A stretch of DNA of 64,000 nt from Pecten maximus. Taxonomy: Eukaryota. The stretch lies in assembly GCF_902652985.1 (NCBI RefSeq), contig NC_047031.1, forward strand, positions 29,140,001 through 29,204,000. Direction: 5' to 3'. The position numbers and the translations under genes are program-made. Below are positions 30,531 through 55,134 of this stretch, piece after piece; positions within the stretch are counted from its first letter, which is position 1; each line of letters opens with the position of its first letter. Below the pieces are notes generated by a model. The model was not told the origin of the DNA, did not search any database, and was given only the letters and a program-made list of their open reading frames with translations.

Positions 30531-30586
30531 AGTAGTTGTAACGTCACCGGTGTGAAGATAATGAACTATTCATATAAGTAATAAAG

Positions 30587-30734
30587 TGTAATTTCTTGTA
30601 TTAACTTCAAGTTACATGTGTTTCACATATGGCGGCGACATCCGGGTTTTTTAGGGGAATACTAATATCCGGATATAATGACGGAAAAGGATCCGGATCA
30701 AACCTGATAGACTATACTATACATTATCATTACA
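30587..30734 (-). mobile_element. 3' LTR of Gypsy element A (148 bp)
   Basis: tgtaat...attaca terminal inverted repeat; PPT aagtgtgggga immediately 5' on the minus strand. Confidence 0.75.
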
Positions 30735-33700: not shown

Positions 33701-34666
33701 GTTCCGCATCAGACTTTAGTTCTATTTTCACTTTGTCCGGTAAACAGCCTAAGCCAGTAAACAGATCTGAGTACTCTGTTTCAACTGTTGATTTGTCAAG
33801 TGGTTCTATGTTTTTGTGTTCCTGTTCTACAGCCAAGACCAGTTTAATAAGTCCTAAGGTTTCACAACTTTTTCTGCCAATAATTGGTTTCACATTTTCT
33901 GGGCTTACTATGAACATAGTTTTGTAGTCATGTCCCTTGTGTGATATAGTAAAAATAACCTGACCAGATACTGGAATAGCTCCTGCGTTGTATGCCTTTA
34001 ACCTTACATCAGACTTGTGTAATCTTGGTCTACTAGGTAGCTTCTCAAAATCGGTCATAGGTAAAACATTTACATCAGCACCGGTATCTAGCTTTAATGG
34101 TATGATGTTACCGTTGACCTGTAATGGTGCCATCCACGACTCTTGGGTATGTTTAGAATCTACAGAGTCAATAAACAGTTCATGTTCCTCGACACTCATT
34201 ACCTTTTTGTTTCTCGTGCTCGGTTTTGGAGTTTTCGTAGAAAAACAAGCTTTCGCGAAATGATTTACCTTACCGCATGCGCGACATGTCCTTCCTTTTG
34301 CAGGACAAGCTCCTCTTGGATGTGTTGTAGCACAATACGAATAAGTAGACTGAGTAGCAGGTTGGGATTTCTCTCTGTGTGATGACAATCCACGTCCTCG
34401 GTCTCCTGTGTTCCTGTATTTACTCCTACCCCTGTTTGAAGCATATTTTCGGCTCACTGTATCTACATGTTCTGGATTTTCTGATAACGACAAGGTTTTC
34501 ATATGTTTCTCTGTCGATTCGGCTGCTTTACACATATCAATACACTTCTGTAGATCAAGGTTACGTTCTCTCAGCAATCTAGCCCTCAGTGTATCATTCT
34601 TTATTCCTTCTACAATCTTATCTTTCAAGATACCCTCTTTCAAATTTCCGTATTCACAGTCTTTAC
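30735..34666 (-). mobile_element. Ty3/Gypsy (Mag/K02A2.6-like) element A internal region: gag 3' half, protease, RT, RNaseH, integrase; frameshifted
   Basis: CxxCx4Hx4C knuckle, LDTGA, LDAASGFWQ...PFGISSAPE...MDDIII, DASQLGLGAVL, SDHGPCY, SPRYPQSNG; split over ORFs 33201-34694, 33053-33322, 32060-33040, 31906-32181 and 31025-31963. Confidence 0.93.
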
Positions 34667-37600
34667 AACTGTCTCGGAATTCCATTCCTGGCAAAAATGG
34701 TGCGTAGGACCTCGATGATTTTCTCAGAAGTGGTTGTCTTCATCTGGATAACCTCTGGCCACTTCGAGTTGGCGTCTACCATTACAAAAAACATTGATCC
34801 GAGATATGGTCCTGCGAAATCTATGTAAACGCGACTCCATGGCTGGGATGGCCATTCCCACGGGTGTATCGGAGCCGCAGGTGGTGCATGTTTCACATTT
34901 TGACAACTATTACAACTTTTGGTCATTGACTCAATCTCCTTGTCAATACCAGGCCACCATGTGTAGCTCCTGGCTAATGCTTTCATTTTCACTACGCCGA
35001 TGTGTCCCGAATGCAGTTCATCGAGCACTCGTTTACGTAGCCTGGGTGGAATTCTCACCCGAATTCCCCACAGAAGACATCCTTGTTGTACAGTCAACTC
35101 GGTTTTCCTGGTGAAATAGGCTTCCGTCTTGCTATTACGGTTGTCTGGGTTCCAACCCGACATAACACATTCATACACTGATGACAAAACTAGGTCTCGA
35201 AGTGTGTCACGTCTCACCTGGTCGTGCGTAACCGGAAGTGTCTCAAATTGCGACAAATTCAACAATGACACAGCCTCAAGTTCTTCCACTTCCGTCTCGT
35301 TCTCTGTCTCCACTGGCATACGCGAAAGACTGTCTGCGTTACCATGTCGCTTTGTGTTTTTGTACTCGATCGCGTAATCGTATCCTGCGAGAAATAAGGC
35401 GTATCGCTGCAGTCGTGCTGCCGATGTCGTCGATATCCCTTTACGCGGACTAAATATGGATACTAAGGGCTGGTGATCTGTTATCATGGTGAAGTGACGT
35501 CCAAATAAGTATGTGTGAAACCGTTTCACTGCCCACACTATTCCCAAAGCTTCCTTGTCGATTTGCGCATAATTTCTTTCAGCTTCATTCAAGGAACGTG
35601 ATGCGTACGCGATGGGTCGCTCACTTCCATCAGCCATAACATGAGATAGTACAGCCCCTAATCCTTTCGGAGAAGCATTACTTGCTACTCTCAGCGGTAG
35701 TGTCGGATCATAATGTGTCAGCACTTCCTTCGATGTGACCATATTCTTCACCTCCTCAAACGCATTTTGACATTCCTCATTCCATTGCCACTTACAGTCC
35801 TTCTGTAACAACTGATGTAATGGGTGCAGTGTTGCTGAGAGGTTTTTCATAAACCGACCACAGTAGTTCACGATTCCAAGGAATGATCGCAGTTCTGTAG
35901 TATTTGTTGGTTCAGGAGCCTTTAACACTACCTCAGTTTTTTCTTGTGTTTTGTGAAGCCCATCACTGTCAATTTCATGTCCACAGAAAGAAATCCGGTT
36001 CTTGAAAAATTCACATTTTTCTAAATTTGCCCTCAGACCGTACTGTTGAAGTCTTTCCAACACACAACTCACATTCTGAAGGTGTTCCCCAGTCGTCTTG
36101 CCCGTAATGATCATGTCATCAATGATGCGTATAGTGCTTCCCCCCCACTAAGCGCTGCGAAGATATCCTCGATTCTCGGAAGAGGATACTGATCAATCTC
36201 TAAGACCGGATTGACCATAACTTTGTAATCTCCACAAAGACGTATTTTCCCAGATTTCTTGACCACTGGCACGATAGGAGTCGCCCACTCACTATAGTTT
36301 ACCTTGGCTTAGATACCATTCTCCACAAGATTATCAATCTCGGCTTCGACCTTTGGACGAATAGCATATGGTACAGGTCTTGGCTTGCAAAATTTCGGTG
36401 TTGCGTCATCCTTCAGGTTAAGCTTGGCCTTGACCCCCTTGACAGTTCCTAGGTCATCTCCAAATACATCCTTGTATTTGTCCAAAATTGTCTGTAGTTG
36501 ATTAGCTGGTTTGGTGTGTTCCGCAATATCACTTGTTTCGCGATGTTTTTCCTCGCGCCTTACTGACACAGATTTGACAGAAGGCCAGTCCAATGTAATA
36601 CTTTTCAGCCACTCGCGTCCGAATAGCGTTGGTCCACCTTTTTGTACGACATACATAGGTAAATTTTTACATTGGTCATTGTACTCTACCTTCATATCCG
36701 CCACACCTAATGGCTTCAGTCTCTCACCTGAATATGTCTTTAAACACACATCAGAATGTGTCAAGGTCTTCAACCGTCCTGGAAAGTGATTCTCAAAGGA
36801 CTTCTGTGACATAACTGAAACTGCTGCCCCAGTGTCTAATTCCATTTCAACCTCTACACCGTTCAACTTTGGCTTTACTATAATAGCATCATGTTTTGTC
36901 TTTGTAACCGACATAACTTCCAGAGATGCTATATAATCATCATCAGTCTCTTCTGTAACCATGTTAACCTTGTTTCCCTTCTTTTGTTTACAAATCTTTT
37001 TACAGTGTCCAGTTTTGGGACAACCAAAACATTCTTTGTCCTTGAAATAGCATTGGTTTGGGTAATGTAAACCATTACAACGAAAACATTTTTTATTTTC
37101 CTTTGGATTTGATTTCGGGTACTGTTTTGTTGAAACTTTATGGACAGTTGCTGTGGCTCCAGTTCTTAATTCATGGTCATCTCGAGCTGCTGTCTCCATG
37201 GCTAAGGCTTTAGTGCTTGCGGTATCGAGAGTCAACGTAGCCTCTGATAACAGTTTCTTTTGTATCTGTTCTGATCTCAAACCACAGACTAAACGGTCTC
37301 TTAACGAATCATTCAAGTTATCAGCGAATTCACAATATTCAACTAATTTCCTAATTGCAGCTATGTACTCACGAATACTTTCTCCCTCTCTCTGCTCTCT
37401 TTTGTGGAACTTGAACCATTCAGCGATAACTAAAGGCTTTGGGCTCAGATGATTTTTCAGTATGGTTACTAAGTCGTCAAATGTTTTTATAGCAGGGTTA
37501 TCTGGTGCTGTTAACCCTCGTAATAACGAATATGTCGAGCCGCCGACTAAACTCAATAACGCTGGGACTTTCTGTACATCTTTAATCCCATTACAAACAA

Positions 37601-37895
37601 AATGTTGCTCTAGACGTTCACTGTAGCTGTCCCATGTTTCAATGGAGCTATCGAAAATGTCAATACGACCTATCCTTCCTGCCATGATGAACTATATGAA
37701 TAGGAGCACAAGAGTTGACAAATTTCCCCAAAACACGAGGTTTTACAGTGATCGAGAAAGGTCAACGCTGACACCGCTTCTGATAAGTAGCTCACTTTTT
37801 TGACAGTTTATTTTGACGTCCTGGCGTTGATTGCACACTATTTATGAGTTCTTTTCTTCATTGCATGAGTCCGTTTCATTCCTCGTCGCCAGATA
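34667..37895 (-). mobile_element. Ty3/Gypsy (Mag-like) element B: PBS, gag-protease, RT with internal deletion, RNaseH, truncated integrase
   Basis: PBS tggcgacgaggaat (minus strand, 37878-37891); gag ORF 36309-37685 with knuckles and LDTGA; ORF 34663-36114 with RNaseH and HHCC; integrase stops at RNGIPRQL. Confidence 0.93.
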
Positions 37896-37992
37896 TGTTG
37901 TATTTTTCTATCAAAGAATCAGAGACCGCCATGCTGCCATTAAAGATTTTTATTGACTACCCATAATGCCTTGCGTGGCATAGTTTAATAAC
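37896..37992 (-). mobile_element. 5' LTR of Gypsy element B (~97 bp)
   Basis: tgttgtat...ataaca termini, adjacent to the PBS; aataaa on the minus strand. Confidence 0.7.
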
Positions 37993-38117
37993 ACAATAAA
38001 AGGATCCGGATGCAGTCCGGAATTACAACTGTTCATTACAGCAAATTTAAGAAACTTTTAGGGATCTGAAACCTTGAACAGAAATATAGAAATTGATAAA
38101 GGCATTTTATTTTCAGA

Positions 38118-39496
38118 ATGGGAAACAAGCACTCCTGCGACGTACATCTTAAGCATAGCAGTCAACGTGATCGGGACGTCTGCATTCAGTTTGTATACAG
38201 TAGTAGATGACTGTCACTTAACCATTGCCCTTTCCCCTAGTTGACCAGGTTGTGATGTTTAGTAGAAACTACATATCAAAACAAATTGTCTATTTTGATT
38301 CCTAACAATATAAATCCTGATAATAGTTTAAATTCAAAAATGTCAATTAGAATTATGATTGGTTTATGGTAAAGCAGTAAAGGAGGCCTTTTCACCACCA
38401 CCGTCTGTCTATTTTAAAAACTGTAACTTTTAAAATGTCCAAACATTAAAGCATTCTTAATTTAATTTGTATTCAGTGTGTCTTTTGAACAGAACAACCC
38501 TTTGAGTTTGCTTGTGGTATATACTGCTGTTCGATTTTTGCAGTCCGATGAGGTCTATCTTGACATTCTTGTCCCGATTAATACATTTGAATAGTGACGC
38601 AATTCAGTTTACAAACTTAACGATTTGAAATCAAATCATAAATATGACTGAAATCCTATATTGAAAATTGCCAAATTTAAAACCAAATGGGTCTCTCACA
38701 CCTCGCAATCCTGGTTTTGACATTTGATGACCTATTTCACGTCGCCTTTTATTAACACTTTAAACCCTAAGCATTACTGGCGAGTCGTTGAAGAACGATT
38801 TCGATATGTCCAGCCACAGAGGAATATCTTTTCATTTATGTTTGATGTGATGTGTATGTTTATTTAGAGATAGAACATTTACAGAAAGGTTCTTAATTAA
38901 CTCTTTACATTTGTTTTGACTTGGTTTAAGTAAAATATTTCGTTTCAGACAAAGAAAATCAAAGGAGGAAATAAGAGAGTTAAAACAGCGTTACGAGGTA
39001 AGTCATCAATATATCAGCATTTTAATTATATATACCGGTACGTATGCCTATATTTCTACTTTAGGAACATTAGGCCTTATTTTATTGGTCTTTGTTTAAG
39101 CTTTATTGTGAATCTATTGTTTTGCGTGATATTGTTTCCATTTGTTGTTCCGCATGACTTGTTCAGTGATGCCAATAATGATGGTAAAATAGTATACAGT
39201 TGATAGAAGAACTATAACACATTTTAATGATTTTATTTCAGCAATATATATGCCAATACGGACATAAACATTCGTCATGGCAGGACTGGAAAGAATGTGA
39301 AGAAATGTAAGTTTAGATGTTTTTACACGTTCAAAATTGATCGATTAATATTCAGAGATATTTGCACGATGTAAAAAATCAATTCGCGATTTCTACTTAT
39401 ATTCAATTACATGTAGTGATGTGTATATGTGTGTCAAAGTTTGGCCTCGCAATATGGAAAATCATCATCAAGTCATTATCCTCATCTGCAATAATC

Positions 39497-39527
<31 letters not shown>

Positions 39528-39602
39528 AACATCAATCCTCCTCCTCCTCCTCCTAATCATCATCATCATCATTCAATCACCATCATCCTCACCACCACCA
39601 TC

Positions 39603-39639
<37 letters not shown>

Positions 39640-42600
39640 AGTGTCATTTCGTATAATAAGATTATCGCAATGTGCTTAATAACATACAAAAAAACTAAAA
39701 CAAAAAAAAATAGTTGAGAAGTATTGTCAAGATTTGGGTGTTGTCTGTAAAAGTTTATCCCATTTTTTCCATCTATTATGAAATGTTTCTATATTTCCCT
39801 TATCTTTACCAATAAAAACATATTTTTGAATATTGTAATTATCTCTAATAGTAAGTTTCAGTGCTTGTACTGATAGAATTTGTTGTAAACATCTTGTTCT
39901 ATTGATGTACTGCTTCATAATGAGTAATACACGATTATCTGTTTTATAATATACATTTTTCTTGTTTCTCATGCCAAAAATGAAAGTTTCTTTATTGAAA
40001 GTAAATGGAATCAACAGCGTATCTAGCAAAAATTCAAAGTTATCAAAAATCACTGTACTTCTTCGCATTCCCATAATAGATGTACAATTGTTTCTGATTC
40101 TATTTTACAGAAGAAGCAGATTGGACTACCAGTCAATCCGATTTTGAATAAATATGAATTAGTGGTTAATATGAATGAAGGCAAAGCCTTGGAAGAGCAC
40201 AGCTAATCTAATTGTCACTTGTATACGTGTATATATGTTTATGTAATATATATGTAAATCTTTTCATTATATTAGCAGATTTATGAAAATCACAAGGCAC
40301 TGATAAGTCATCAAAAGGCCTTATTATATATAACAAGAATTATACAGAATTATATATCTCATTTTTCCCGCTTTATCAATAACATCTTTCAATTTATGGA
40401 GTAGTGTTCAAGTAATTAAATAATATCAGTAACCAGTGTTCAGCGAGACATTGAGATAGGGTGAAAACTGAACTCTAATGAAAATTCTCAAAATTCAGTT
40501 TTGAGGCCAAAATATGTGAATCTGTAAAGACATTTAAGTTTCAATTAGATTAATATTGCTTTTATAACACAGTTTATAGTGAATCTGAACATAACTTCAC
40601 AAAATTCCCTGTTAGTATTTTTATTTTACCCAAAAATAGGTGAACCTGGAAAAAAATCCTCTAAATGATGGATAGGTGCATGTACAGTATAGGTGCATGT
40701 ACAACAGTATAGGTGCATGTACAACAGTACACTGTATATATATCAGTACCCTCACCAGTTTCAATTCAATCTAGATCTGACAGCATGCAACTCAATAACA
40801 CTGTCAAATGTGGACTTTAAACAAATATTGACGCCACTGCTATTAAATATTTGTAGTGATGGTTGTAAACTCGCTTTTATTTGATAAATTAATTGAACAA
40901 ATTAAATAAGGCCAAAAAGTGTGATTTCTGTATATGAATTAAATAATTATTTCTATAACCCATCCCTATAGGGTAATAGAACAGGATACCCTGTGGTAAA
41001 AAAAAAAAAAATCTAATATTTTGAAAAGTACCTTAATCAAGTCTCTTTCATCCATGAAGGATGTTTGATTTCTTCATATCTGGAAGTTTAGAAGTTTCGT
41101 CAATTTTACGCTTTTTGGTCCCACTACTCAGGCCACTGTGGATCAGTCATAGTGCCAATATATATATATACATATACATATTTAATCGATTCACAAAGTT
41201 TCTACAAGTTTTATTCTACATATATGTATATACACATGTACATAAATATATAAACATATACTATTGCACAGATATCCCATTCTGATACTTATATTAAAGT
41301 TTGTGTTATTTCCAATAGCAATATTCAATATAATTTCTGTTTTTGTATTGAGTTAACTAATAACACGGGTCCCCTCATCTTAAAAAAACCAAACTACAGA
41401 CCCGAGGTGCATTAAATTATATCAATTTTAAAGGACTTGAATTGAAGATCCTTCTACCATGTGTAATATTTGATTCTACCATATATTTGGAATGGAATAT
41501 AGAACATTTTGAACTGTTATTCAGTCACTTCAACTCATTTTTGGGCAAGACCGCTTTGGACGAGGACATGTACTTATATTTATAACATATGATTTGAAGA
41601 TCTGTTTATAGAGAACTTTTAAAAGAAATTCACTTAACAGTTAACATTGTGAGCTTTTAAAAATAAAATATGAATCAACTTTGGGATTACATCAGTATAT
41701 AATTATAATGTTCTGTCAATTTTGTAATATCTGGTTGAAAGTTTAAATTTAGTTATTTATGTCAAAGTTTTTCGAGTTGTCAAACTTTGAATTATCTTAT
41801 ATATATTTTATTACTATAAAAACAAAGATTTTGACTTGGACCAGTGAGATACTTTAATTTATAATCAGTGTTTTTGAGTTATCATAGTTCGAGATAATTA
41901 ATTTTGATTGTAAGTACATGTATTCTCTTGTCTCCACTAAAACAGAATTTGTAGCAAATTTAAGTTAAACCTACTAAGAGTCAACACCATAGACAATTAC
42001 TCTCCTTTTGTAATTATGATTAATTACAAAATAATTATAGAAATTCTATAATCTTCTAGGCTTTGGAAATTAACAGCAGTTGTTTATAAGGTTTAAATCA
42101 TATTACACTGTACATTTACATGTGTTCATAAACATTGTAATACATTTGGTTTAAATTTGGTTTACTTCATTTAAAGGGTGATTCCATCATTAGTTTAAAT
42201 TCAAAGGTTAGGTCATCAAAATTAAACTTATTGGAAAATATGATTTTTTCCCAAATAGTAAATCTTCGAATCTTTAATTTACATAAATCAAACAGTTTGA
42301 CTCGCAGGGTAATTAACACAAGTTCTCCAAATTCTAAGTCCTAAAATTCTTTATTCCTACCAAAATATCACTTTTTACTTGAAAGCCAGTCAGTATTTTT
42401 GTAGGATTCATCATTTTTCTGTACATTTTGGCATTGATTTATTTCCCTGTTCAAAAGTGGATTTCATCAGTAAAAAATGTACATGGTTCTGATATCTGAA
42501 AGAAGGAATGTCCCTCTAAATTGAGTCTCATTATATAATTAACAGCCAGGGTCATTTAAGAACATGCCAGGCATTGGAGAAGTGTTGGAAATTCAAACAC

Positions 42601-45600
42601 CTAATTAGAACACACACAATGAAACAGTCCTTGTATGTTTTGACATTGAGTACAAAAGATTGTTTTAAATTTCCTTTTTATTAATTTCAGGCAATATTTT
42701 GTGAAATAAACAGTTACTATACTTAGCAATAGAAATCTGATCTATAATACTCTCAACAGTATAATATGACAATTATTTCATAAACATTGCAAAGAATTAT
42801 TTTTCAGATAAATTTCATTTAAAATTCAATCATTATTCTTGGTACAACCTACATATGTGCCATGTTGATCTATGTTTATTTCTGCTGACTAATGTAGACT
42901 AACTACACATGTACTAAGCCTGCATTTCATAGATGATGAAAAAATATAGGGTTATCACATGGGCTTTATATACTATACTAGAATCTAGACTCGGGCATTT
43001 TAAATGGTTACTAGCCCCATGTGCTGTAATATAACCTTCTAATTATAATAAACAATGCGAGTCAGACACATCGTATCATCTGTAACTAACAATAAAAAAG
43101 CTGGGACGTAACCGATAGGCACTTGTTTCCTATGCATATGCCTAGCCTAGTTGTCTTTCGGCATGTTATTGTTTACAATGTAAATCAAGTGCCTGTCATA
43201 AGCCTAACGTTAACGCTGAGAAAATAAATCGACAAGGCGGCCTAAATATTTACGATAGAATCGATCATAACACAGTGTTATCGGCAAATGCCTACCTTTG
43301 ATCAGATCAGACTGGAACCACATACAAAATTAATTACAAGGACCCTATACTGAGTTTAATTCCAACGTATTCGCATGTCTTGTTGTGTACAATGTATCTA
43401 AGTTTTTATTAAACCAGATGAGTGTTTTCATTATTGAAAAATTCATATTCACTGAAAAAGTCTCTTCTTTCTCTTTAAGGCATCCCCTGGATTTGAACAC
43501 ATCTTTTCAAAATTTGTTTTTGCATTTCATTTCACATTTTCTTATGTATCCACAATTAGCTAACATACCTATATCAATACTTCTGCCTAAGATTAGTTGC
43601 CATTTACTTGCTTTAGAGTATAACCTTCTAATCTATGATAATTTTAGCGCCTTTATAAAAGATTATATATCAAGCATTTTCAAACCCCCTTTCTGTATAG
43701 TCTTTTATAATAATGTCCCTTTTCACCTTATCTACTTTACTATAAAAATGTGGTTAAATTGTGATACCAAAAGAGATTTAATAATATGTATTTTACCAAT
43801 AGGAGTAAGCATCCTTTTATTCCAATTATTCAAAAGAGATTTAAGTTTAACCAATTTCTTGTCAAAGTTCATTTTAGTCATTTTATGTAAATCTATATGG
43901 AAGTCAATACCCAATATGTTAGATTATTGGTTTCCCCAACGTTGGTTCCATTCTGGGCAAAATTGTTCTTCACTATATTTCATGCTACCTATCCATATTA
44001 CTTCTGTCTTGCTTTTACTTATTTTTAACCCAGATATATCTGCATATCCTTTTAACTCATCCAATGTCTCTCTAAATGAATTTCTAGATCCATCAAGGAT
44101 ACCTGAGGTTTCATCTGCATATTGAGATAACAGTAATGGAGTATCTTCTATATTTATTCCTTTAATATTATCATTATTTCTTATTCTAATTGCTAGGACT
44201 TCAGCACATAAAATGAATAAATATGGAGATATAGGGTCACCTTGTCGACATCCACGTTTAATATAAAAAAATGAAGATAAATTGCCCCCCTGATTAACAG
44301 ATGAATTTGAACCATTTTGAAACATATGAACCCAGTTCTTTATATGTTCCCCAAAGTTAAAAAAACAAGCACTTTATCAATAAAATCCCAATTAACCGAG
44401 TCAAAGGCTTTTTCAAAATCTTTTGTAATATTCCAGGAATGTCATTCTCTTCTGCATAGTGCATAATATCATATAACTCTAGTGTTTTCACTTACATACC
44501 TACCTGAAATAAAACCAGACTGATCAGTATTGATAAGTTTATCTAATACTTTTCTTATTCTATTTGCAATTGAACCTGAAGCAATTTTATAAATTGTATT
44601 CAGAAGTGAAATGGGTCTCCAATTCTTCAAGTATTGTCTTGACTTATCTCCCTTTGGTAACCATGTTATGATTCCCGGTTTTTGTGTAACAGATACATTT
44701 TAATATCAAATCCATATTGAATTGATCTAACTACAAAATGACCTAATTGTTTCCAAAAACATTTAAATAATTCTACTGTGAAGCCATCAGATCCTGGACT
44801 TTATTATTTTTCATATTTTTTAGAGTTTGAGATGCTTCACTTAAAGTAATGTTACCCTCTAAACTGTTTGTTTCTATAAAATTGAATTTTGATGTATTAT
44901 TTACATTAAGATATTCATTCAAATTTATATTTTGCAATAATTGGAAATTATTGTCTTCTGAATACAATCTTTCATAATATTTCTGCACTTCATTTCATCT
45001 TGATTCATGATTATTTCTCCATCATCTTTTTCTATGACTGGTATAATTTTTGTAACGAAATTCCTATTTTCTAAATTGAAAAAATACCTGGTAGGTTTTT
45101 CAACTTCTTCAACTCATTTTACTTTAGACCTCAAAATGTTCCCTTTAAGCTTATACTTTCTAATTGATTCTAATTCTTTTTGGCAGGCCTCTAATTCTTC
45201 TAAATTTTACCTCCTCTTGAGCTTCTATTTTTATAATTTTTACCTCAGATGTTGCTCTTGATTATTTCTTTTGTTTTTTCTTAAAAGACGCATATGAAAT
45301 GGCTTTCCCTCTAATTTCTTAAAAGAGTTGATCATTTATTGTAAACTGAATATCTTGGTTTGGAATATCATCTAAACTATTCAGATTATAGATAGGCACA
45401 ACATATTGTGCTTTTACATCTAGAATATGTTTATTAATTAATTTCAAATAATCATGAAGTAAGGAATTGTTGAATTTCCATAGCCCTTTGCCTTTCTTGT
45501 ATTCATTAAATTTTAGTGTAATACATGGAATGGAGTGATCAGATCTATAGCCTGGGTCAATATTTGCTTTTTGTATACAAGATAAAAGGTTCTCAGAAAT

Positions 45601-48600
45601 TAAAAAAAAGTCTAATCTTGCTTTATTGGACTTCTTCTCCTCCATGTGTATCTTTTACTATCTGGGTGGTGTTCTCTATATATGTCAATAAGCTCCAGTT
45701 CCTCTATTATTTCAATAACTCTTTCTCTCGCTCTAGGGTTGTTAACTTGCCTATAATTATCACAGTCCAAATCAGGATTCAATACTAAATTAAAATCTCC
45801 ACAGATAATAAATGAATCATTATTGAACTCTGATATAGTATCTACAACCTTATCATAAAAAATAAGTGTATCTAAATTTAGGCCATATATAGTAACAAGG
45901 GTAAATCTCTTTTCATCTGTGATAATATCTAGCGCTAAACAATTGCCATCTGGACTTTTCTTTTCTTTTATAACTTCAAAATTATTATTGAGTAAGATTG
46001 CACCCCCCTTGAATTAGAGTTAAAAGAACTAAAGTAACAGGAGTAGCCCCATTCTGCTCTAATAATATTTTCTTGTATCTTGTCTTGTATACAATAAATA
46101 TTAAAGTTCATGTCCCTCTATTATGCGAATACATCCTTACGTTTATTTCTATCATCCAACCCTTGACAATTAGCAGTTAGAATTCGGATTCCTTCCATAA
46201 TAGGTTCCACATGGTGACAGAGTGTATATTGATATTGCTGGCACTGCTTACCGGTCTGATACTTGATAATAGTCAGAAATCAGGAATATTTAACTTCTGC
46301 CAGTGATAATCCATATTTGAAGCCTTGCATCAAATCCGCATTTAAGACGTGTTGTGTAGCAATAATCGTAAATTCTGACGGTACTCTATAATTACGTGTC
46401 TATAAAAAAGCCTATCTAACCATGGCTCGGTTTGTGAGTTTTCCCGAATAAATTTAGGAGACAGAATATTACATTTCTGTTGTATTTGATCAAATTTTGA
46501 TACAACCGTTACCCTCATAATACCATAAAAATTGCCGCAGACAAATGACCAAGATATTCTAAACATATAAAACAACCCATAGTCTATTCTGATTCCTCGC
46601 ATCATTGTTTTCGGTTATCTAAAAAGAGAAACCGGGAGATTACTTTTAGCTGTCACTTTTTCGATTTTAAATTTCTTTAGTTCACTTATAGCAAATAATT
46701 TGAAATCATCTTTAAAAAACGAACAACACTCAATTCAATCTGCAATAAGTAAATGCTGCGTTCCGATTGCGACAATGTCGCATTCGTCCTTCTGTAGACA
46801 ATTCTTTCAGAAACGTCGCATTTATTTATATAAAAGAATGTAAAACAGGCCCAGAGTATTATTAATTGGGATTTGTCGTCCTCTTATCAATTAAGATCGT
46901 ACCTTGGGGCCAACGACTGACGCTTTGAGTATCATCACATTGTTACAATCAACCTCGGACACCGTCTGCACCTTATCTTAGTCGTGTTGTGAATGTAAAA
47001 CCCCCAGTAAACGAATTTAAAAAAAATTGCATTCACTCTTCCATAGTGTTTTACGTTTACCTTTATATGCACTAGGCCTAATCGAAATGTTCTGTTTTAG
47101 GAGGAGTAGACAACATTGCGAAATAGAAGAGTTGAGACAGAAGGTATGATACAGTAGGAATCAATTCTTCATTAAGTTGTGTAACACCCGATGTTATCTG
47201 ATAAAGAATCTGTCATTATTCCTATAGATTTGTACTGTAACCATCTTTATCTGTCCCAAGTAAAGTAAGCTTCACCCTGAGAAGGTTTAGTTATGTTGAA
47301 TTTAAAGTCAATGCAATTTTCAATAAAATTCAGGCACAAAGTCAGAATAATTGTACGCAACATATAATTTCCTACTTGTGGAAATTTAGATATAGATCGA
47401 TTTCCATTTAATTTGGTAAAAGGAGGCGTTAGGGGACTGCAAGTTCAACTGTATGGGTCTTTTGTCTTAGGAACCACACATTCTTTTTATTGGTCGAAAC
47501 TTAGAAATATTGAGCGGTTTTGATGAAAACTGTTGAAACAGAGTTATCGCCCCTCACTACGCTTCATTCCTTCTGTGACATCCTTCAGGTGTCACCTCAC
47601 TAGTATTATACTCCTAATAGAAGGACTATAACGCATTTAAATGATTTTCTTTCAGCAACATATATGCCCGTACGGACATCACCATTCATCATGGAATGAC
47701 TCGAAGGAATGTACCGAAATGCAAGTTTAAATATTTTTACACGTTAAGATAGAAAAATATTCTGAGATATTTGCACGATGTAAAAAAGCAATTCGCGATT
47801 TCTATTTATATTCAATTAGTGATGTGCATATGTTTGTCAAAGTTTGGCTTCGCAATTCAAGATGGAAAATCCGAGGACAAAATGTCTGATACTTGATAAT
47901 AGCCAGAAATCAGGAATATTTAACTTTGCCAGTGATAATCCATATTTGAAGTCTTGCTTCAAATTCTGCAGCTAAATATGTGTTGTGTAGCAATAATCGT
48001 AAATTCTTCTGGTACCTATAATTACGTCTCTGCAAAAAGACTATCTAACAAGGCTCGGTTTGTGATTTTTCCCGAATGAATTTAGGAGACAGAATATTAC
48101 ATTTCTGTTGTATTTAATCAAATTTTGATACTACCGTTACCTTCACAATACCATAAAAATTGCCACAGACAAATGTTGGCGTTATAACCAAGATATTCTG
48201 TACATATAAAACAACCCATAGTCTATTCTGATTCCTCGCATCATTGTTTTCGGTTATCTAAAAAGAGAAACCGGGAGATTACTTTTAGCTGTCACTTTTT
48301 CGATTTTAAATTTCTTTAGTTCACTTACAGAAAATAATTTGAAATCATCTTTAAAAAAACGAACAACACTCAATTCAATCTGCAATAAGTAAATGCTGCG
48401 TTCCGATTGCGACAATGTCGCATTCGTCCTTCTGTAGACAATTTTTTCAGAAACGGCCCCTTTATTTATATAAAAGAATGTAAAACAGGCCCAGAGTATT
48501 TTTAATTGGGATTTGTCGTCCTCTAACCAATTAAGATCGTACCTTGGGGCCAACGACTGACGCTTTGAGTATCATCACATTGTTACAATCAACCTCGGAC

Positions 48601-51600
48601 ACCGTCTGCACCTTATCTTAGTCGTGTTGTGAATGTAAAACCCCCAGTAAACGAATTAAAAAAAATTGCATTCACTCTTCCATAGTGTTTTACGTTTAAT
48701 GTCATATGCACTAGGCCTAATCGAAATGTTCTGTTTCAGGAGGAGAAGCCATGATCTCAAAATGGAGGAGATGAGACTGAAGGTATGAAAGCAATCAATT
48801 CTTCATTTAGTTGTGTAACACCCGATGTTATCTGATAAAGAGTCTGTCATTATTCCTATAGATTTGTACTGTAACCATCTTTAACTGTCCCAAGTAAAGT
48901 AAGCTTCACCCTGAGAAGGTTTAGTTATGTTGAATTTAAAGTCAATGCAATTTTCAATGAAATTCAGGCACAAAGTCAGAATAATTGTACGCAACATATA
49001 ATTTCCTACTTGTGGAAATTTAGATATAGATCGATTCCCATTTAATTTGGTAAAAGGAGGCGTTAGGGGACTGCAAGTTCAACTGTATGGGTCTTTTGTC
49101 TTAGGAACCACACATTCTTTTTATTGGTCGAAACTTAGAAATATTGAGCGGTTTTGATGAAAACTGCTGAAACAGAGTTATCGCCCCTCACTACGCTTAA
49201 TTCCTTCGGTGACATCCTTCAGGTGTCACCTCACTAGTATTATACGGTTAATAGAAGGACTATAACGCATTTAAATGATTTACTTTCAGAATAATAAATG
49301 CCAATTCGGACATCACCATTCGTCATGGAATGACTTGAAGGAATGTGAAGAAATGCAAGTTTAAATATTTTTACACGTAAAAATAGATAAATATTCAGAG
49401 ATATTTGCACCATGTAAAAAATCAATTCGCGATTTCTATTTATATTCAATTAGTAATGTGCATATGTGTGTCAAAGTTTGGCTTCGAAATTCAAGATGGA
49501 AAATCCGAGGACAAAATGTCTGATACTTGATAATAGCCAGAAATCAGGAATATTTAACTTTGCCAGTGATAATCCATATTTGAAGCCTTGCTTCAAATTC
49601 CGCAGTTAAATGTGTGTTTTGTTGCAATAATCGTAAATTCTTCTGGTACTTTATAATTACGTCTCTGCAAAAAGACTATCTAACAAGGCTCGGTTTATGA
49701 TTTTTCCAGAATAAATTTAGGAGACAGAATATTACATTTCTGTTGTATTTAATCAAATTTTGATACTACCGTTACCTTCACAATACCATAAAAATTGCCG
49801 CAGACAAATGACCAAGATATTCTAAACATATAAAACAACCCATAGTCTATTCTGATTCCTCGCATCATTGTTTTCGGTTATCTAAAAAGAGAAACCGGGA
49901 GATTACTTTTAGCTGTCACTTTTTCGATTTTAAATTTCTTTAGTTCACTTATAGCAAATAATTTGAAATCATCTTTAAAAAACGAACAACACTCAATTCA
50001 ATCTGCAATAAGTAAATGCTGCGTTCCGATTGCGACAATGTCGCATTCGTCCTTCTGTAGACAATTCTTTCAGAAACGTCGCATTTATTTATATAAAAGA
50101 ATGTAAAACAGGCCCAGAGTATTATTAATTGGGATTTGTCGTCCTCTTATCAATTAAGATCGTACCTTGGGGCCAACGACTGACGCTTTGAGTATCATCA
50201 CATTGTTACAATCAACCTCGGACACCGTCTGCACCTTATCTTAGTCGTGTTGTGAATGTAAAACCCCCAGTAAACGAATTTAAAAAAAATTGCATTCACT
50301 CTTCCATAGTGTTTTACGTTTACCTTTATATGCACTAGGCCTAATCGAAATGTTCTGTTTTAGGAGGAGTAGACAACATTGCGAAATAGAAGAGTTGAGA
50401 CAGAAGGTATGATACAGTAGCAATCAATTCTTCATTAAGTTGTGTTACACCCGATGTTATCTGATAAAGAATCTGTCATTATTCCTATAGATTTGTACTG
50501 TAACCATCTTTATCTGTCCCAAGTAAAGTAAGCTTCACCCTGATGAGGATCAGTTATGTTGAATTTAAAGTCAATGCAATTTTCAATAAACTTCAGGCAC
50601 AAAGTCAGAATAATTGTACGCAACATATAATTTCCTACTTATTAATATATCCCCACAATCTCATCGAAATTAATCTACATGTGATTTTGACCTTTAACAG
50701 TACTAAATACCCTCACGCAATCCAACATACAGCTATATGGTCGCAAAACGCACCAAAAGCAAATCTACGAAGCGCGCGTCTCGCACATTTGTGCGGGTTA
50801 AGATCGGTTCATCATATTACTAAATGACAAAATGCGGAAAATGTCAACAAATCTCCATTCATCTAATTTTTCATGGAAAAAAATAACAATGACAAGCTCG
50901 TATGGATCAGTCTTGTTCTATGTTTTCTGTTGCAGAGGACGTACACATGTAGTCTCGGTCATTCACACAGCAGTGTGGAAGAGCTTAACGCTTGTCACAA
51001 TAAGTAAGTGACAGCAAAATTGTAACTTTCTACCTCAGTTATCTCCAATACTGTTAATCGTTTAATTGATATTAATGATCGGAGGGACCATCGATTATTT
51101 TACATGTATCAAAACACAACTGGAATCTGCATTTTTCTTTAATATCCATTTTGATACATTGAAATGCATGTATTCGAATATGAATGCTATTACCTATATT
51201 GCCATTTGTATCTTTCCACAGCAAGCTGCAATCTGAATATCTCGAACGCTTTGCCAAATTGCCGAGGTATGCACGATCACTCCATACAAATAAATCACTC
51301 CCAACTATTAAGGTTATTATCAATCCATGTTGCTGTAGCAACTGAAATTTAATCTCTCGCGTCTTAAGATATCTTATATTTAAAGTTAATTTAGAGAAAA
51401 ATAATTAGGATAAAAACATGTACTAGACACGGTCAGTTGATGCTTACGATTATATCTACATTTCTGTTTTTCCCCTTGCAGTGGTGATGTCGCCAAAGGT
51501 AAGACTGCATCTCATTCTTAGTTTTTAGGTTCAGTTTTCAATACGTTTAGAATAGTACTATGAATCTAAAAACAAGATAATAATTTGAAATCTTTACAGT

Positions 51601-51701
51601 TTGTTTTATTATGCCAATTTGTAATGATAATGGTTTTTTTTATAGGTTTCCCGGCACTTCTTCCTGCCAAAACAAGGTATTTGATAGAGTACCCTAAATA
51701 A
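38118..51701 (+). CDS. Uncharacterised ~194-aa micro-exon-encoded repeat protein: N-terminal MGNKHS plus five C-x2-G-H-x-H-S-S-x2-[DE]-x3-C motifs with charged helical linkers
   Basis: Exons 38118-38188, 38949-38997, 39242-39306, 47101-47143, 47656-47720, 48740-48782, 49290-49354, 50364-50406, 50936-51003, 51482-51498, 51646-51701. All have pyrimidine-rich AG acceptors, compatible phases and no stops. Donors are GT except GC at 47721 and 49355. The last exon is uncertain (possible donor at 51677 to an exon near 53064-53125). Confidence 0.72.
39490..39640. repeat. Compound microsatellite (ATC)n/(CTC)n/(ACC)n/(AG)n
   Basis: Directly visible. Confidence 0.95.
39700..40078 (-). mobile_element. 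3' end of an L1/Tx1-type ORF2
   Basis: ORF 39727-40074 ...LLIMKQYINRTRC...FHNRWKKW, typical of a Tx1 C-terminus. Confidence 0.7.
40111..40147 (+). CDS. Candidate alternative terminal exon of the same gene (IRSRLDYQSIRF*; 73-aa two-motif isoform)
   Basis: tattttacag acceptor, phase 2 matching exon 39242-39306, RSR start like the linker exons, aataaa overlapping the stop. Confidence 0.45.
43440..46197 (-). mobile_element. L1/Tx1-type LINE ORF2 (APE endonuclease + RT), heavily disabled
   Basis: MEGIRILTANCQGL start at 46197, ICGDFN, RLDFFL...SDH, KNWRPISLLN, GCRQGDPISPYLF, SQYADET. Confidence 0.9.
46255..50640 (+). repeat. ~1.63-kb tandem repeat, ~2.7 units, each full unit carrying two coding micro-exons
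   Basis: tctgatacttgataatag at 46255, 47885 and 49519; homologous segment also at 39219-39460. Confidence 0.95.
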
Positions 51702-54700
51702 GACGAGGATTCGGACCGAGTACATTAACGCCAAAAATTCAATGGATCTGCTTTCACACTCTCACAGGATTTTCACTTTGCGCAAACCCTTTGGTAAACA
51801 AACCGTTTGGAGATATCGAAATTTTTTCAAACATATTCTAAAAACAAATGACGTTGCCAAGGCACTTGATATTTATTTTAACCCCAGGATCACGTACGCA
51901 CGATCACCTTTCTGTCTTTCACAATATACATTTTCGTTTTCCCGCATGATATAAATCCAATTTGAATAACTTAGCAAATCTCAGTCTAGGTGAATTTATT
52001 TCAACATTTATAGCGTGACATTTTTAATTCTAATTAAAGTAGTGCATTTGGAATTTGTTGTATTGTTTTGTCTTTTTTGTTATTCAATAAAAAAAACCCA
52101 GAAAAGTTGACCATTATGTTATTCCAAGTGACCATGTGAGCATTAAAACATCAATTACAAAATTTGGAAGATTATAGTGAGAAGCAGATCAACAGATTAC
52201 TATAGGAACCACGGAACCAAATGATTTCCCATAGACGATAATGTTATCGTTTACCAATGTGCTGCTTAAATGGAGTTTTCAAAATTGGCCCACTAGCCAT
52301 AATTGTGAAGAATGTAATCTCGGAAACCAATTTAAACTTTTTTTATGTGGGGGTCCACATCTTGTATTGAATTCAGCACCAAAAATTCACCTAAATTTAC
52401 AACAAAATACACACTTAATCAACTCCCCCTGACAAAAACAGGCTAGAAAAAAACAACTTTTTTTCTATATATTTTACATCTACATGTATTGCCCAGCCCA
52501 CACATAAAACTTTGGAAACTTCTCCCACCTAAATATCCTATCAGTAGGCCCCGATGCATTGACCTTGTCCAAACAGGGAAAACTCACAATTTATTAATGC
52601 AGTATTACTCAAAATCTGACCAGTTTCTGCAAGAGCTGTATCGTCGCAAACTGAAAAGCTAGACTAAATTAAAGAACAGGAAATTTCCATGACGCGATGT
52701 ATCTTTGACCAATAACTCTGTTAACAAAACAAAATGGCAGATGCAATAACTGTGAGCGTGGTAAGAAACTGTTTTTTAAGGATTTTAGACCAAATTACAT
52801 TGCAGATAAGCAAAAGCTTTTAAATTGTCATTATATAGGCACAACTATCCAGAGATTATTTGGTGATAAATTTTCATGGCGTTCACTTATAAAAACCCAA
52901 CTGAAATATGCCATAGTCATTTCAATGAAGCCGAGAAAAAGCTTCAATTTGACTCCAAAAGATATGCAACTCTATACCATTATTGTGCTGACTGTTTTTT
53001 ATTAGATGTATAAATTATGCTATATGCCTATCATGTTTGCCGTATTATGATTGGTCTAGACAGGTCTTGCAGATGGAGAATACAAAAAGATGATGTTTTG
53101 ACCAGCGTTGAGTGAGGGTATATACGGATGAAATAGGTCATCGACTTTGAGACTAAATAAATAAGTGTTTTGGGGGTAAATATATATCTCATTTATCCAT
53201 ATATATATATCTAAGAGTAGGTGTTGTGTCACTCCCGATTTTATTGTATTTGCACCAAAATCCTACCGAGACACCAAACGGTGTCGGATAATTCCACGTT
53301 TTCATATAGTAATGCACTCTGGCCCTACAGCAGACATGATGTCAGGGCCAGAGGGTACTCGGGTTACTGTCTGGCTTGGTTAGTTACGTTTTGCCTTTTT
53401 TGGCGGTTTACAAGATATCGTTCGGAAAAATAAAAGATTGAAAAGAAATGACACTTATTTCAACTTTGAGGTCAAGGCACACACTACACATTGTTTCGTT
53501 TATGTATTTCATTGTTTTCAACATTTTCTCCTTAGTACGAGAGGCGATGTTAAAGTTTACAGACGGAAAATCTTCCTTGAGATCAGCTTTAACCTGCATT
53601 TGCATATAGTGGTACTATTCGTTTAGCTGGTTATGTAGAATATCATGAAAGGGGAACAACTCCGTGACAATATTAAGAATTAAATCAAGTGTGCATGCAG
53701 TTTCCAAACCTGACTGGGACAGTACGGCGTTTTTCATTTTTTCCCCATTTTAACAAACAGGCAGGGCCTAAATAAATTCTCTCCATATTATAGGTGGACA
53801 AATAGTGAAAAAGTGGAAAATTTAATTCGGATAATTGAAATCGAGTTATATATACTTACAATTAACAAACAGCAAATTTATACATATTGAGAGGGAGATA
53901 AATCTTATGCATGTATCTAATTAATTTTGGACATACAAATACAGATACACATACAAACAAAACGTACATTTGTATTTATAAGGTATGAGAGATTAAATTA
54001 GCACATAGCAACATAATTATATGTATGTAATAGTAGCATAGTTATTCAGTAAACAGTTTGGTAGATAGACCAAATGACCGTATGCAAACTTTTGCATAAG
54101 TCATATCTACCAAGCTGTGTTTTTAGAGTAAAAAATTCACTACATCATACATGTACCTGTAATCATAAAAGAAATAGGGAAATACTGCATGAATGATACA
54201 TTGAAATGTACATAGAGGAAAATTAAAACAATATGAGGTGATAATCAATTTCTAAATATATTTGATATAATGACATCATGTAATTTTGTATTTTATAAAA
54301 GTTGAAACGATTTGATTTACCTATATAATAATGAATCTGGTGTAGCATCAGTTTATTTGTATTTCCATCACAGCTCGAGCATCCATTTACTAGGGTTTCC
54401 ATAGAAGTATGATTATTGTTAGTAACACAGTTATCAAGAAAGTTAAAAAGATTATTACGCAGGTCATTGTATAGTGGGCATTCTTGAAAAAATGGCGTTT
54501 TACTAAGGGAAATACAATGAAACGGGTACTTGTATGCCTATGGTGACTGAATACGGTTTTCCCATGTGGGAAAGACGACATTTAATCTATCAAATCTTGA
54601 GTCGTCGTGGTCTGAGCACGCGCGAACGCAACAAGACAAAAAGGCGCTTACACGTCAACACGACATGACCGGAACAAACCATCATTTGTATGACGCTAAA

Positions 54701-55134
54701 AATAAAGTTACTTGCAAGCAAATGTGTCGAAAAAGATTTAAAAGTTATGCTTAATAAAAACGTTTGATGAGTTATTTGACTACATAAAATAAATATAACT
54801 GTTTCGGAGTGAACCAACGACACAGTAAACAGAATAACCCCCAAGAAAAAAAATCAAAATTATAAATTACAAGAATAAAACAAGTTAACAACTTCAGAAG
54901 TCATGTGATGCAGCCATGGAAACATAATAAATTATACGAAATTATAATCTTTAACTGAGTTGATGACTGCACACACCTGCTCACAGACGTATTTGACCTT
55001 TCACCCTAGATTACGTATCGATGAGTACCTGGAGTATAGCATAAGGTAAGGGCGACACACACCTGTCGTTTGGACGGTTTTAGTGATGTTGACATCACAG
55101 GAGTATTTAATCTGAAGTGACAGAAAAAAGGATA

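What the first reader, a model, noticed from the sequence alone, without database searches (positions are those of the whole stretch)
38118..51701. Hidden micro-exon gene encoding a putatively myristoylated protein with five Cys/His (C-x2-G-H-x-H-S-S-x2-[DE]-x3-C) repeats
Seen: eleven 17-71-nt exons, invisible to the ORF track, splice in frame to MGNKHSCDVHLKHSSQRDRDVCIQ-QRKSKEEIRELKQRYE-QYICQYGHKHSSWQDWKECEEM-RSRQHCEIEELRQK-QHICPYGHHHSSWNDSKECTEM-RRSHDLKMEEMRLK-NNKCQFGHHHSSWNDLKECEEM-RSRQHCEIEELRQK-RTYTCSLGHSHSSVEELNACHNN-GDVAK-GFPALLPAKTRYLIEYPK. Internal motif exons are always phase 0->2 and linker exons phase 2->0. The C, HSS, D/E and C positions are conserved even in exons 38118 and 50936, whose flanks share no visible similarity, which argues for protein-level selection. 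Known: MGxxxS is the N-myristoylation consensus. Inference: a membrane-anchored tandem metal-binding (C,H,H,C) protein. The spacing differs from the U11-48K/GTSF1 CHHC finger and I do not recognise the family.
Basis: partly seen in the sequence, partly recalled or inferred. Interest (0 to 1): 0.9.

Follow-up and report, generated by a model that had tools for sequence, protein, structure and literature searches.

The report
Scallop micro-exon Cys/His repeat gene
A real, spliced king-scallop gene made of twelve tiny exons encodes a small protein with five copies of a previously undescribed Cys/His (probably metal-binding) module, found so far only in scallops and evolving unusually fast in its exons.

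Summary
All eleven lie at the stated coordinates with AG acceptors, GT or GC donors and the stated phases. Assembled contigs from public runs, which skip the introns, join the last eight in one transcript.

- It missed a 45-nt exon at 51222-51266, so there are 12 coding exons and about 209 codons.
- RefSeq already holds a truncated 104-aa model of this gene, LOC117315924 of Pecten maximus, so it is only half hidden.
A 213-aa Argopecten irradians protein with the same N-terminus and architecture supports them.

The 22-residue module has the spacing C-x3-H-x-H-x8-C. It has no Pfam or PDB sequence match. A profile of it hit only those two scallop proteins among 1.84 billion representatives. About 19 such exons occur in this genome.

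The AlphaFold model gives a beta-hairpin plus a long helix per module. It resembles C2H2 finger arrays only weakly.

Exons diverge 2-10 times faster than their flanking introns.

Metal binding and N-myristoylation remain inferences.

Earlier notes of this scan, s1-792064 and s1-792516, cover parts of this same stretch.

The parts
38118..38188 (+). Coding exon 1 (71 nt, phase 0 to 2). It holds the start ATG in an A(-3)/G(+4) context, a Met-Gly-Asn start with Ser6 and Cys7, and the first Cys/His module. An AG lies 2 nt upstream of the ATG, so a 5'UTR exon may precede it.
   Evidence: The N-terminus aligns with residues 1-23 of the Argopecten protein P0002 (11/23 identical, E 1e-6). Not tested with reads.
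38949..38997 (+). Exon 2, a charged linker (49 nt, phase 2 to 0).
   Evidence: It has a tttcag acceptor and a GTAAGT donor. Not tested with reads. No counterpart was found in the first 30 kb of C3979.
39242..39306 (+). Exon 3, Cys/His module 2 (65 nt, phase 0 to 2, GT donor).
   Evidence: The exon and its flanks (39190-39453) are 84-85% identical to the module exons of units A and B.
46254..50640 (+). Tandem array of a 1.63-kb genomic unit: A 46254-47883, B 47884-49517, C 49518-50640 (partial). Each full unit carries one linker exon and one module exon, together 108 nt or 36 codons.
   Evidence: units are 94-97% identical. C3979 holds only one unit.
47101..47143 (+). Exon 4, linker of unit A (43 nt, phase 2 to 0). 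It is identical to exon 8.
   Evidence: Joint 47143>47656 seen in contigs.
47656..47720 (+). Exon 5, Cys/His module 3 (65 nt, GC donor).
   Evidence: Joint 47720>48740 (GC..AG) seen in runs X2 and X15.
48740..48782 (+). Exon 6, linker of unit B (43 nt). It differs from the unit A linker at 11 of 43 nt. The RefSeq CDS starts at a Met inside this exon.
49290..49354 (+). Exon 7, Cys/His module 4 (65 nt, GC donor).
   Evidence: Joints 48782>49290 and 49354>50364 (GC..AG)..
50364..50406 (+). Exon 8, linker of unit C (43 nt).
50936..51003 (+). Exon 9, Cys/His module 5 (68 nt, phase 0 to 2). It ends in Cys-His, as most paralogous modules do.
   Evidence: Joints 50406>50936 and 51003>51222..
51222..51266 (+). 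It encodes a short helical segment after the last module.
   Evidence: Joints 51003>51222 (GT..AG) and 51266>micro-exon, the first in X2 and X15 and the second also in X3. The exon is present in RefSeq protein P0001 and, diverged, in C3979.
51482..51498 (+). Exon 11, a 17-nt micro-exon (phase 2 to 1).
   Evidence: Its letters lie between the two sides of joint 51266>51644 in three runs (table 5c)..
51646..52100 (+). Exon 12: the last 17 codons, the stop TAA at 51699-51701, and about 0.4 kb of 3'UTR reaching the AATAAA near 52087.
   Evidence: Contigs cover 51633-52050. 18 runs from 7 studies hold all or part of this stretch.

Best explanation
Shown. This is a transcribed, spliced, protein-coding gene of the king scallop Pecten maximus (RefSeq LOC117315924). 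It has 12 coding micro-exons of 17-71 nt spread over 13.6 kb.

Read exon by exon, the product of about 209 residues is:
- an N-terminal Met-Gly start that runs straight into the first module;
- five 22-residue Cys/His modules with the spacing C-x3-H-x-H-x8-C, typically [YF]-x-C-x2-G-H-x-H-S-S-x2-[DE]-x3-C;
- charged 14-16-residue linkers between modules;
- a short tail.

One linker exon plus one module exon total 108 nt, so each pair is a frame-neutral cassette. A 1.63-kb genomic unit carrying one cassette has been duplicated in tandem. That duplication took the array from three modules (the state in contig C3979) to five.

Inferred.
- Each module folds as a beta-hairpin carrying C, H and H, followed by a helix carrying the last C that continues through the linker. 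The four residues chelate one metal ion, most likely Zn2+, in the manner of a small beta-beta-alpha finger.
- Gly2 is N-myristoylated, which would hold the array on a membrane.
- The scaffold positions (C, G, H, H, S, S, D/E, C) are fixed while the positions between them vary, and the exons diverge faster than their introns. So the modules probably act as a diversifying binding surface, not as an enzyme or a bulk metal store.

The ligand is unknown.
For: Gene and splicing:
- Exon coordinates, phases and splice sites are as listed.
- Seven introns are skipped in contigs, from three of the four runs laid (X2, X15 and, for the last, X3), including both GC..AG introns.
- No intronless copy was found in the genome.
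- RefSeq protein P0001 equals exons 6 (from its internal Met) to 12.

Family:
- A profile of 12 module exons hit only P0001 and the Argopecten irradians protein P0002 among 1.84e9 representatives, at E 2.5e-17 and 2.3e-14.
- P0002 begins with the same Met-Gly-Asn start, Ser6 and Cys7, then has 4 modules with charged linkers.
- About 19 module exons occur in this genome, all with the same exon phase and CA|GT donors.

Scaffold:
- C, H and C are invariant, and the first H is kept in at least 90% of 18 sequences.

Fold:
- The AlphaFold2 model built on alignment A2 has mean pLDDT 75, and 77-92 over residues 11-80. It shows a hairpin plus a 21-23-residue helix per module.
- Nearly all of the 32 weak Foldseek rows, and most nearest neighbours of the ESM Atlas model, are tandem C2H2 arrays.

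Diversification:
- Linker A vs B differs at 11/43 nt and module A vs B at 12/65 nt, against 2-4% in their flanks (Fisher p 8e-7 and 2e-5).
- Window vs C3979: exons 32/292, flanks 58/1113 (p 7e-4).
Against: - No experiment or tool here shows metal binding or myristoylation.
- The structural matches are not significant: best Foldseek E is 3.2 and best VIA Z is 5, with long helices dominating.
- The single-sequence model of P0002 is poor, at pLDDT 40.
- In exon 1 the first His sits one residue earlier than in the other modules.
- Modules 2-4 lack the trailing His that most paralogous modules have.
- pN is about equal to pS in the exon comparisons, so relaxed constraint outside the scaffold cannot be told from positive selection on these few sites.
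- Exons 1-3 are not confirmed by reads. An AG 2 nt before the ATG leaves room for an upstream coding exon, which would remove the N-terminal Gly.
- The C3979 copy lacks exons 2, 11 and 12.
Confidence: 0.55

Rival explanations
1. The same gene and fold, but a soluble nuclear or cytoplasmic nucleic-acid- or protein-binding finger array. The Gly2 start would be incidental and not myristoylated.
For: The weak structural neighbours are DNA-binding C2H2 arrays. The linkers are rich in Lys, Arg and Glu. The myristoylation consensus is short and often matched by chance (general knowledge).
Against: The Met-Gly-Asn start, Ser6 and Cys7 are kept in all three known N-termini, although half of the other residues of that exon changed between Pecten and Argopecten. 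The module is about 6-9 residues shorter between first and last ligand than a C2H2 finger.
Confidence: 0.2
2. A young, lineage-restricted transcript whose reading frame is under little constraint. The repeats would simply reflect recent duplication, and the Cys/His pattern would be inherited rather than functional.
For: pN is about equal to pS between duplicated exons and between the window and C3979. There are no homologues outside scallops. The C3979 copy lacks three exons.
Against: Neutral exons should diverge like their introns, not 2-10 times faster. C, H, H and C stay fixed over 18 modules that share only 27-50% identity with the reference module. Frame, phase and splice sites are kept in unlinked paralogues and in Argopecten. 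The gene is expressed in runs from several studies.
Confidence: 0.12
3. The Cys and His residues serve as a metal store or buffer (Cd/Zn/Cu handling, metallothionein-like) or form disulfides, rather than building finger-like binding modules.
For: There are two Cys and two or three His per 36 residues in a regular array. Scallops are known metal accumulators (general knowledge, not tested here).
Against: The Cys content is far below that of metallothioneins, with no C-x-C or C-C motifs. No signal peptide is seen at the N-terminus that would allow oxidative folding. The hypervariable inter-ligand positions point to recognition rather than buffering.
Confidence: 0.08
4. The exon chain is a chance pattern or an assembly artefact.
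For: The micro-exons are invisible to ORF finders. Three cassettes lie in a near-identical tandem repeat that could in principle be mis-assembled.
Against: Contigs from independent runs join the exons exactly at the predicted sites and pass through the distinct A and B exons in order. A RefSeq protein and a homologue in another genus exist.
Confidence: 0.02

Closest known systems
CHHC zinc finger of U11-48K / GTSF1 / TRM13
   Same: Both have one Cys, two His and one Cys, in that order, as putative ligands. Both are small independent modules that can occur in tandem joined by a helical linker, with an overall shape like C2H2 fingers (PMC9539491).
   Different: The family motif is CPX4HX9HX3C in a domain of about 40 residues. 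Here the spacing is C-x3-H-x-H-x8-C in 22 residues. Pfam gives no match. The context is also different: a Gly2 start, a scallop-only distribution and micro-exon cassettes.
Classical tandem C2H2 (beta-beta-alpha) zinc-finger arrays, including fast-evolving ones such as PRDM9 and KRAB-ZNF
   Same: The predicted module is a hairpin plus a helix, repeated head to tail. The weak structural neighbours are almost all C2H2 arrays. The scaffold residues are fixed while the residues between them vary, and the array length differs between haplotype-like copies. The comparison with PRDM9 and KRAB-ZNF rests on my own knowledge.
   Different: The ligand order and spacing differ (C,H,H,C rather than C,C,H,H). 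The helix is much longer and runs into the linker. No significant sequence or fold match was found. Each module is split off in its own micro-exon, whereas those arrays lie in one large exon.
Micro-exon genes (MEGs) of schistosomes
   Same: In both, most of the coding sequence is in very short exons. Both are lineage-restricted and fast-evolving (own knowledge; the literature search for bivalves found nothing relevant).
   Different: As I recall, schistosome MEG exons are symmetric (multiples of 3) and their products are secreted via signal peptides. Here the exons alternate 65 and 43 nt (phase 0 to 2 to 0), so only exon pairs are frame-neutral, and the N-terminus is a Gly2 start without a signal peptide.
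Accelerated-evolution gene families with conserved introns (snake-venom PLA2, conotoxins, MHC exons)
   Same: Exon divergence is significantly above intron divergence between duplicates. The comparison rests on my own knowledge.
   Different: Those products are secreted or are surface proteins. Here synonymous differences are raised as well (pS 0.10-0.36), so intron homogenisation by gene conversion is as likely as positive selection.

Membership tests
CHHC zinc finger (zf-U11-48K; U11-48K, GTSF1, TRM13) | Ligand spacing CPX4HX9HX3C in a domain of about 40 residues (PMC9539491). | tested here: not met
   All 18 aligned modules have C-x3-H-x-H-x8-C; exon 1 has C-x2-H-x2-H-x8-C.
CHHC zinc finger (zf-U11-48K; U11-48K, GTSF1, TRM13) | Match to the family profile. 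| tested here: not met
   No such Pfam hit even at E up to 10, for five module exons and for P0001 and P0002.
C2H2 zinc finger (PF00096) | C-x2-4-C-x12-H-x3-5-H signature and a profile match. | tested here: not met
   No Pfam match. The ligand order is different.
C2H2 zinc finger (PF00096) | Beta-beta-alpha fold. | tested here: inconclusive
   The model shows a hairpin plus a helix at pLDDT 77-92. The Foldseek top rows are C2H2 arrays, but at E 3-10 and TM about 0.2. VIA gives Z of 5 or less.
N-myristoylated proteins (NMT substrates; PROSITE PS00008-type consensus) | Gly at position 2, an uncharged non-aromatic residue at 3, Ser/Thr/Ala/Gly/Cys/Asn at 6, and no Pro at 7. | tested here: met
   Residues 2-7 are G-N-K-H-S-C in the window, G-N-N-H-S-C in C3979 and G-N-E-Y-S-C in Argopecten. 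The consensus is recalled from my own knowledge.
N-myristoylated proteins (NMT substrates; PROSITE PS00008-type consensus) | The Met at 38118 is the true start, and the lipid is actually attached. | not testable with these tools
   No reads were laid on exon 1. The AG at 38115-38116 could splice it to an upstream exon. The Argopecten RefSeq model starts at the same Met.
Schistosome-type micro-exon genes | Symmetric micro-exons (length a multiple of 3) and a secreted product with a signal peptide. | tested here: not met
   Exon lengths are 71, 49, 65, 43, 65, 43, 65, 43, 68, 45, 17 and 56 nt. Only one is a multiple of 3. The N-terminus is polar.
Metallothionein | A very high Cys share with C-x-C, C-C or C-x-x-C clusters and few His or aromatic residues. 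| tested here: not met
   Each module has 2 Cys, none adjacent, plus Trp, Tyr and His.

The most novel reading that the evidence does not exclude
A scallop-specific class of membrane-tethered, hypervariable mini zinc-finger arrays. They would be built from frame-neutral micro-exon cassettes that expand by tandem duplication, with exons kept diverse while introns are homogenised. On this reading the array is a recognition device in a genetic conflict, such as immunity against a pathogen or a selfish element. It would be a new metal-binding fold family and not a variant of CHHC or C2H2 fingers.
Probability: 0.15. Interest if true: 0.8.

Novelty: new variant of a known kind. Interest (0 to 1): 0.5.

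Why it matters
- It adds an undescribed, taxon-restricted Cys/His module with the spacing C-x3-H-x-H-x8-C to the catalogue of small metal-binding repeats. No Pfam family, solved structure or paper was found for it.
- It shows how gene predictors truncate micro-exon genes. The RefSeq model keeps only the 3' half of this one.
- It offers a compact natural case of cassette duplication in which exon divergence far exceeds intron divergence. That is useful for studying diversifying selection against gene conversion in bivalves, whose genomes are rich in presence/absence variation.
- If metal binding and lipid anchoring hold, it would be a simple system for studying how a membrane-tethered finger array recognises its target.

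Tried and rejected
- Pfam on the five module exons and on P0001 and P0002 gave nothing beyond chance: TNFR_c6 at E 0.13 and Evasin at E 0.016, both below cut-off.
- The PDB sequence search with the module profile gave only antibody CH1 chance matches.
- Rfam found nothing in the window.
- Word-based protein searches with P0002 and P0001 returned only the queries themselves.
- The ESM Atlas feature search gave no usable hit.
- AlphaFold2 on P0002 without an alignment gave pLDDT 40 and was not used.
- Foldseek against PDB and VIA-align wide found nothing significant.
- Literature searches for the two accession numbers and the locus name, and for micro-exon genes in bivalves, found nothing relevant.
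So the RefSeq gene range here and the Argopecten locus could not be fetched.
- No long terminal repeats were found around the retroelement at 31025-37685.
- The joints '47141>50934' and '49354>47101' are not exon skipping or back-splicing. Linker exons 4 and 8 are identical over 43 nt, so a contig end in exon 8 is placed on exon 4.
Exons were searched one by one by reference, and full-length work used the database proteins P0001 and P0002.
Full report
**Organism and place.** The window is G000:C17:29140001-29204000 of a 918,306,378-base assembly in 3,983 contigs. A protein encoded here is held in public databases as XP_033726241.1, 'uncharacterized protein LOC117315924 [Pecten maximus]'. So this is the king scallop genome. 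The window has no N and no Rfam match.

**The observation.** A six-frame scan finds the H-x-H-S-S core four times on the + strand within 39263-50960, plus one unrelated hit at 57322. By phase arithmetic on the genomic coordinates, without joining the exons for any search, the chain is open from the ATG at 38118 to the TAA at 51699-51701. Module exons run phase 0 to 2 and linker exons phase 2 to 0. Every exon follows a pyrimidine tract and an AG. Donors are GT, except GC at 47721 and 49355.

**Transcription and splicing.**
- Eighteen public runs from seven studies hold all or part of the last exon and 3'UTR, nine of them half of its words or more. Their library type is not on record.
- I laid the contigs of four of these runs on 47000-52150.
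- Contigs skip exactly the predicted introns: 47143>47656, 47720>48740 (GC..AG, two runs), 48782>49290, 49354>50364 (GC..AG) and 50406>50936.
- They then go 51003>51222 and 51266>51646, with the letters of the 17-nt micro-exon lying in between (three runs).
- Single contigs of 246 nt run through exons 4-5-6-7-8, and contigs of 343-534 nt through exons 9-10-11-12. So the cassettes sit together in one RNA.
- Exon-by-exon searches of the whole genome found each exon only here and on contig C3979, always with introns. The intron-less contigs therefore come from RNA and not from a retrocopy.
- Two odd joints (47141>50934, and 49354 back to 47101) are placement ambiguities, because linker exons 4 and 8 are identical.

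- The transcripts contain a further exon, 51222-51266 (45 nt, phase 2 to 2). It adds 15 residues between module 5 and the micro-exon. The gene therefore has 12 coding exons and about 209 codons.
- The gene is not entirely hidden. The RefSeq protein P0001 (104 aa) equals the translation from an internal Met in exon 6 to the stop, exon 10 included. What is missing from the annotation is the 5' half: exons 1-5, with three modules and the Gly2 start.

**What is not shown.** The support for them is indirect:
- They have canonical sites and compatible phases.
- The same exon order is found on C3979.
- Above all, a 213-aa protein of the bay scallop Argopecten irradians (P0002, XP_069102811.1) starts with the same Met-Gly-Asn, Ser6 and Cys7. 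It is 11/23 identical to exon 1 (E 1e-6). It continues with a charged linker and three more modules, followed by a tail that begins like exon 10.

**The module and its family.**
- An alignment of 12 module exons, later extended to 18 sequences, has invariant Cys, His and Cys. The first His is kept in at least 90%, and Gly and the second Ser in at least 70%.
- The spacing is C-x3-H-x-H-x8-C. In exon 1 the first His sits one place earlier.
- A 22-position profile hit only P0001 (E 2.5e-17) and P0002 (E 2.3e-14) among 1.84 billion cluster representatives.
- Pfam, PDB sequences, the ESM Atlas feature search and word-based searches gave nothing.
- In this genome the profile finds about 19 module exons at E below 1: the 5 here; 3 on C3979; 5 in a cluster 1.3 Mb upstream at C17:27.826-27.867 Mb; 5 on scaffold C348, which looks like a second copy of that cluster; and 1 on C945.
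- The paralogous exons keep the same design: an AG just before the module, and a donor after CA, giving phase 2. Most of them end in Cys-His.

**Comparison with the CHHC finger.** The described CHHC finger of U11-48K, GTSF1 and TRM13 has the motif CPX4HX9HX3C in about 40 residues (PMC9539491). The spacing here does not fit, so I do not file this module under that family.

**Structure.** P0002 folded alone gave pLDDT 40 and was discarded. P0001 was folded with alignment A2, in which the 16 module exons pile on its second module. That model has mean pLDDT 75, and 77-92 over residues 11-80. Each module is a short beta-hairpin carrying C, H and H, followed by a 21-23-residue helix that starts at the Ser-Ser, carries the last Cys and continues through the linker. 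Foldseek against PDB has no hit at E of 0.001 or better. Nearly all of its 32 weak rows are tandem C2H2 arrays such as ZBTB24, Zif268, SALL4, BCL11A, CTCF and WT1. Most nearest neighbours of the Atlas's own model of P0002 are also C2H2 arrays, at TM 0.2-0.33. VIA-align over 48,161 chains stays at Z of 5 or less and is dominated by long helices. So the finger-like shape is a consistent hint, not a demonstrated fold relationship.

**How the array grew.**
- Positions 46254-50640 are 2.7 tandem copies of a 1.63-kb unit at 94-97% identity. Each full unit carries one linker exon and one module exon, 108 nt together.
- Exon 3 with 50-150 nt of flank on each side is an older copy at 84-85% identity.
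- Contig C3979 (38,430 bases) is colinear with window 29095-60743 on the other strand. It has a single unit and three modules.
- C3979 also lacks the retroelement at about 30550-38044, the 6.8-kb segment 39453-46254, and 51430-54789, which holds exons 11 and 12. I could not find exon 2 in its first 30 kb.
- Whether C3979 is a divergent haplotype, a degenerate duplicate or an assembly product cannot be told here.

**Exons change faster than introns.**

| Comparison | Exon differences | Flank differences | Fisher p |
|---|---|---|---|
| Unit A vs B, linker exon | 11/43 | 12/299 upstream, 5/245 downstream | 7.7e-7 |
| Unit A vs B, module exon | 12/65 | 8/300 upstream, 11/250 downstream | 2.0e-5 |
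| Window vs C3979, five exons | 32/292 | 58/1113 | 7e-4 |

Nei-Gojobori counts give pN 0.11-0.28 and pS 0.10-0.36, so omega is near 1 on few sites. Plain neutrality cannot explain exons that outrun their own introns. The two remaining readings are diversifying selection on the exons, and homogenisation of the introns by conversion or unequal exchange with the exons kept apart. They are not exclusive.

Within modules 2-4 and their C3979 counterpart, the positions C, G, H, H, S, S, W, D and C never change. About ten others take two to four states each.

**Mechanism proposed.**
- Shown: the gene, its splicing for exons 4-12, the cassette design, the family and its restriction to scallops in the databases searched, and the excess of exon divergence.
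- Inferred: one metal ion per module held by C, H, H and C; N-myristoylation of Gly2; and a binding role for the variable positions.
- The Met-Gly-Asn start with Ser6 and Cys7 fits the N-myristoyltransferase consensus as I know it, in all three N-termini. The ATG has A at -3 and G at +4.
- Rivals: a soluble nucleic-acid-binding array, a weakly constrained young gene, and a metal store. Each is listed with its odds.

**Limits.**
Exons were searched by reference, and the database proteins P0001 and P0002 stood in for the full length.
- The short profile cannot see single, distant modules in other phyla. 'Scallops only' therefore means 'no multi-module or close relative elsewhere among annotated proteins'.

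**Verdict.** This is a real gene with an undescribed Cys/His module, partly annotated and of unknown function. It is of moderate interest, mainly for its architecture and its pattern of evolution.

Noticed in passing
window 31025-37685 (- strand): Five long ORFs carry protease, reverse transcriptase, RNase H (twice) and integrase domains. This is a Gypsy-like retroelement, possibly two nested or rearranged copies, ending about 430 nt upstream of exon 1. The whole segment from about 30550 to 38044 is absent from C3979. No long terminal repeats were found.
   Followed up: partly
window 1608-4179 (+ strand): Two long ORFs (463 and 384 aa) are full of classical C2H2 zinc fingers. They are unrelated to the Cys/His module studied here.
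   Followed up: partly
G000:C3979:1-30000 (loci L013-L015): This 38-kb unplaced contig is colinear with window 29095-60743 in reverse, at about 85-97% identity. It carries a three-module version of the gene with a single 1.63-kb unit. It lacks exons 2, 11 and 12 and several kilobase-scale segments. It may be a divergent haplotype or a degenerate duplicate.
   Followed up: partly
G000:C17:27825886-27867337 and G000:C348:76704-138007 (loci L016-L025): A second locus holds five module exons of the same family spread over about 41 kb. One pair is a 5.7-kb tandem duplicate. Scaffold C348 appears to hold a second copy of the locus. No first exon with a Met-Gly start was found there, and no annotated protein from it appeared in the searches.
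   Followed up: partly
window 43385-44125 and the segment 39453-46254: The 246-aa ORF in the large intron has no Pfam match. It lies in a dispersed repeat with at least 392 candidate copies in the genome. The surrounding 6.8 kb is absent from C3979, so it looks like a transposon insertion in the intron.
   Followed up: partly
window 47500-47606 and 49134-49240: A repeat of about 105 nt, with at least 771 candidate copies at 92-98% identity, sits about 50 nt upstream of each duplicated module exon. Run contigs pile on it at high depth with loose ends, so that depth does not come from this gene.
   Followed up: partly
window 39461-39639: A long (ATC)n microsatellite of about 45 copies is directly followed by (AG)18, about 150 nt downstream of exon 3.
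   Followed up: no
window 51696 and 51488: Run X3 differs from the assembly in two places. A>G at 51696 changes the last codon from Lys to Glu. A T>C change in the micro-exon (GAT to GAC) is synonymous. Both are probably allelic variation.
   Followed up: no
window 51430-54789: This 3.4-kb segment, which holds the last two exons and the 3'UTR, has no counterpart in C3979. There the flanks abut at 5772-5775.
   Followed up: no
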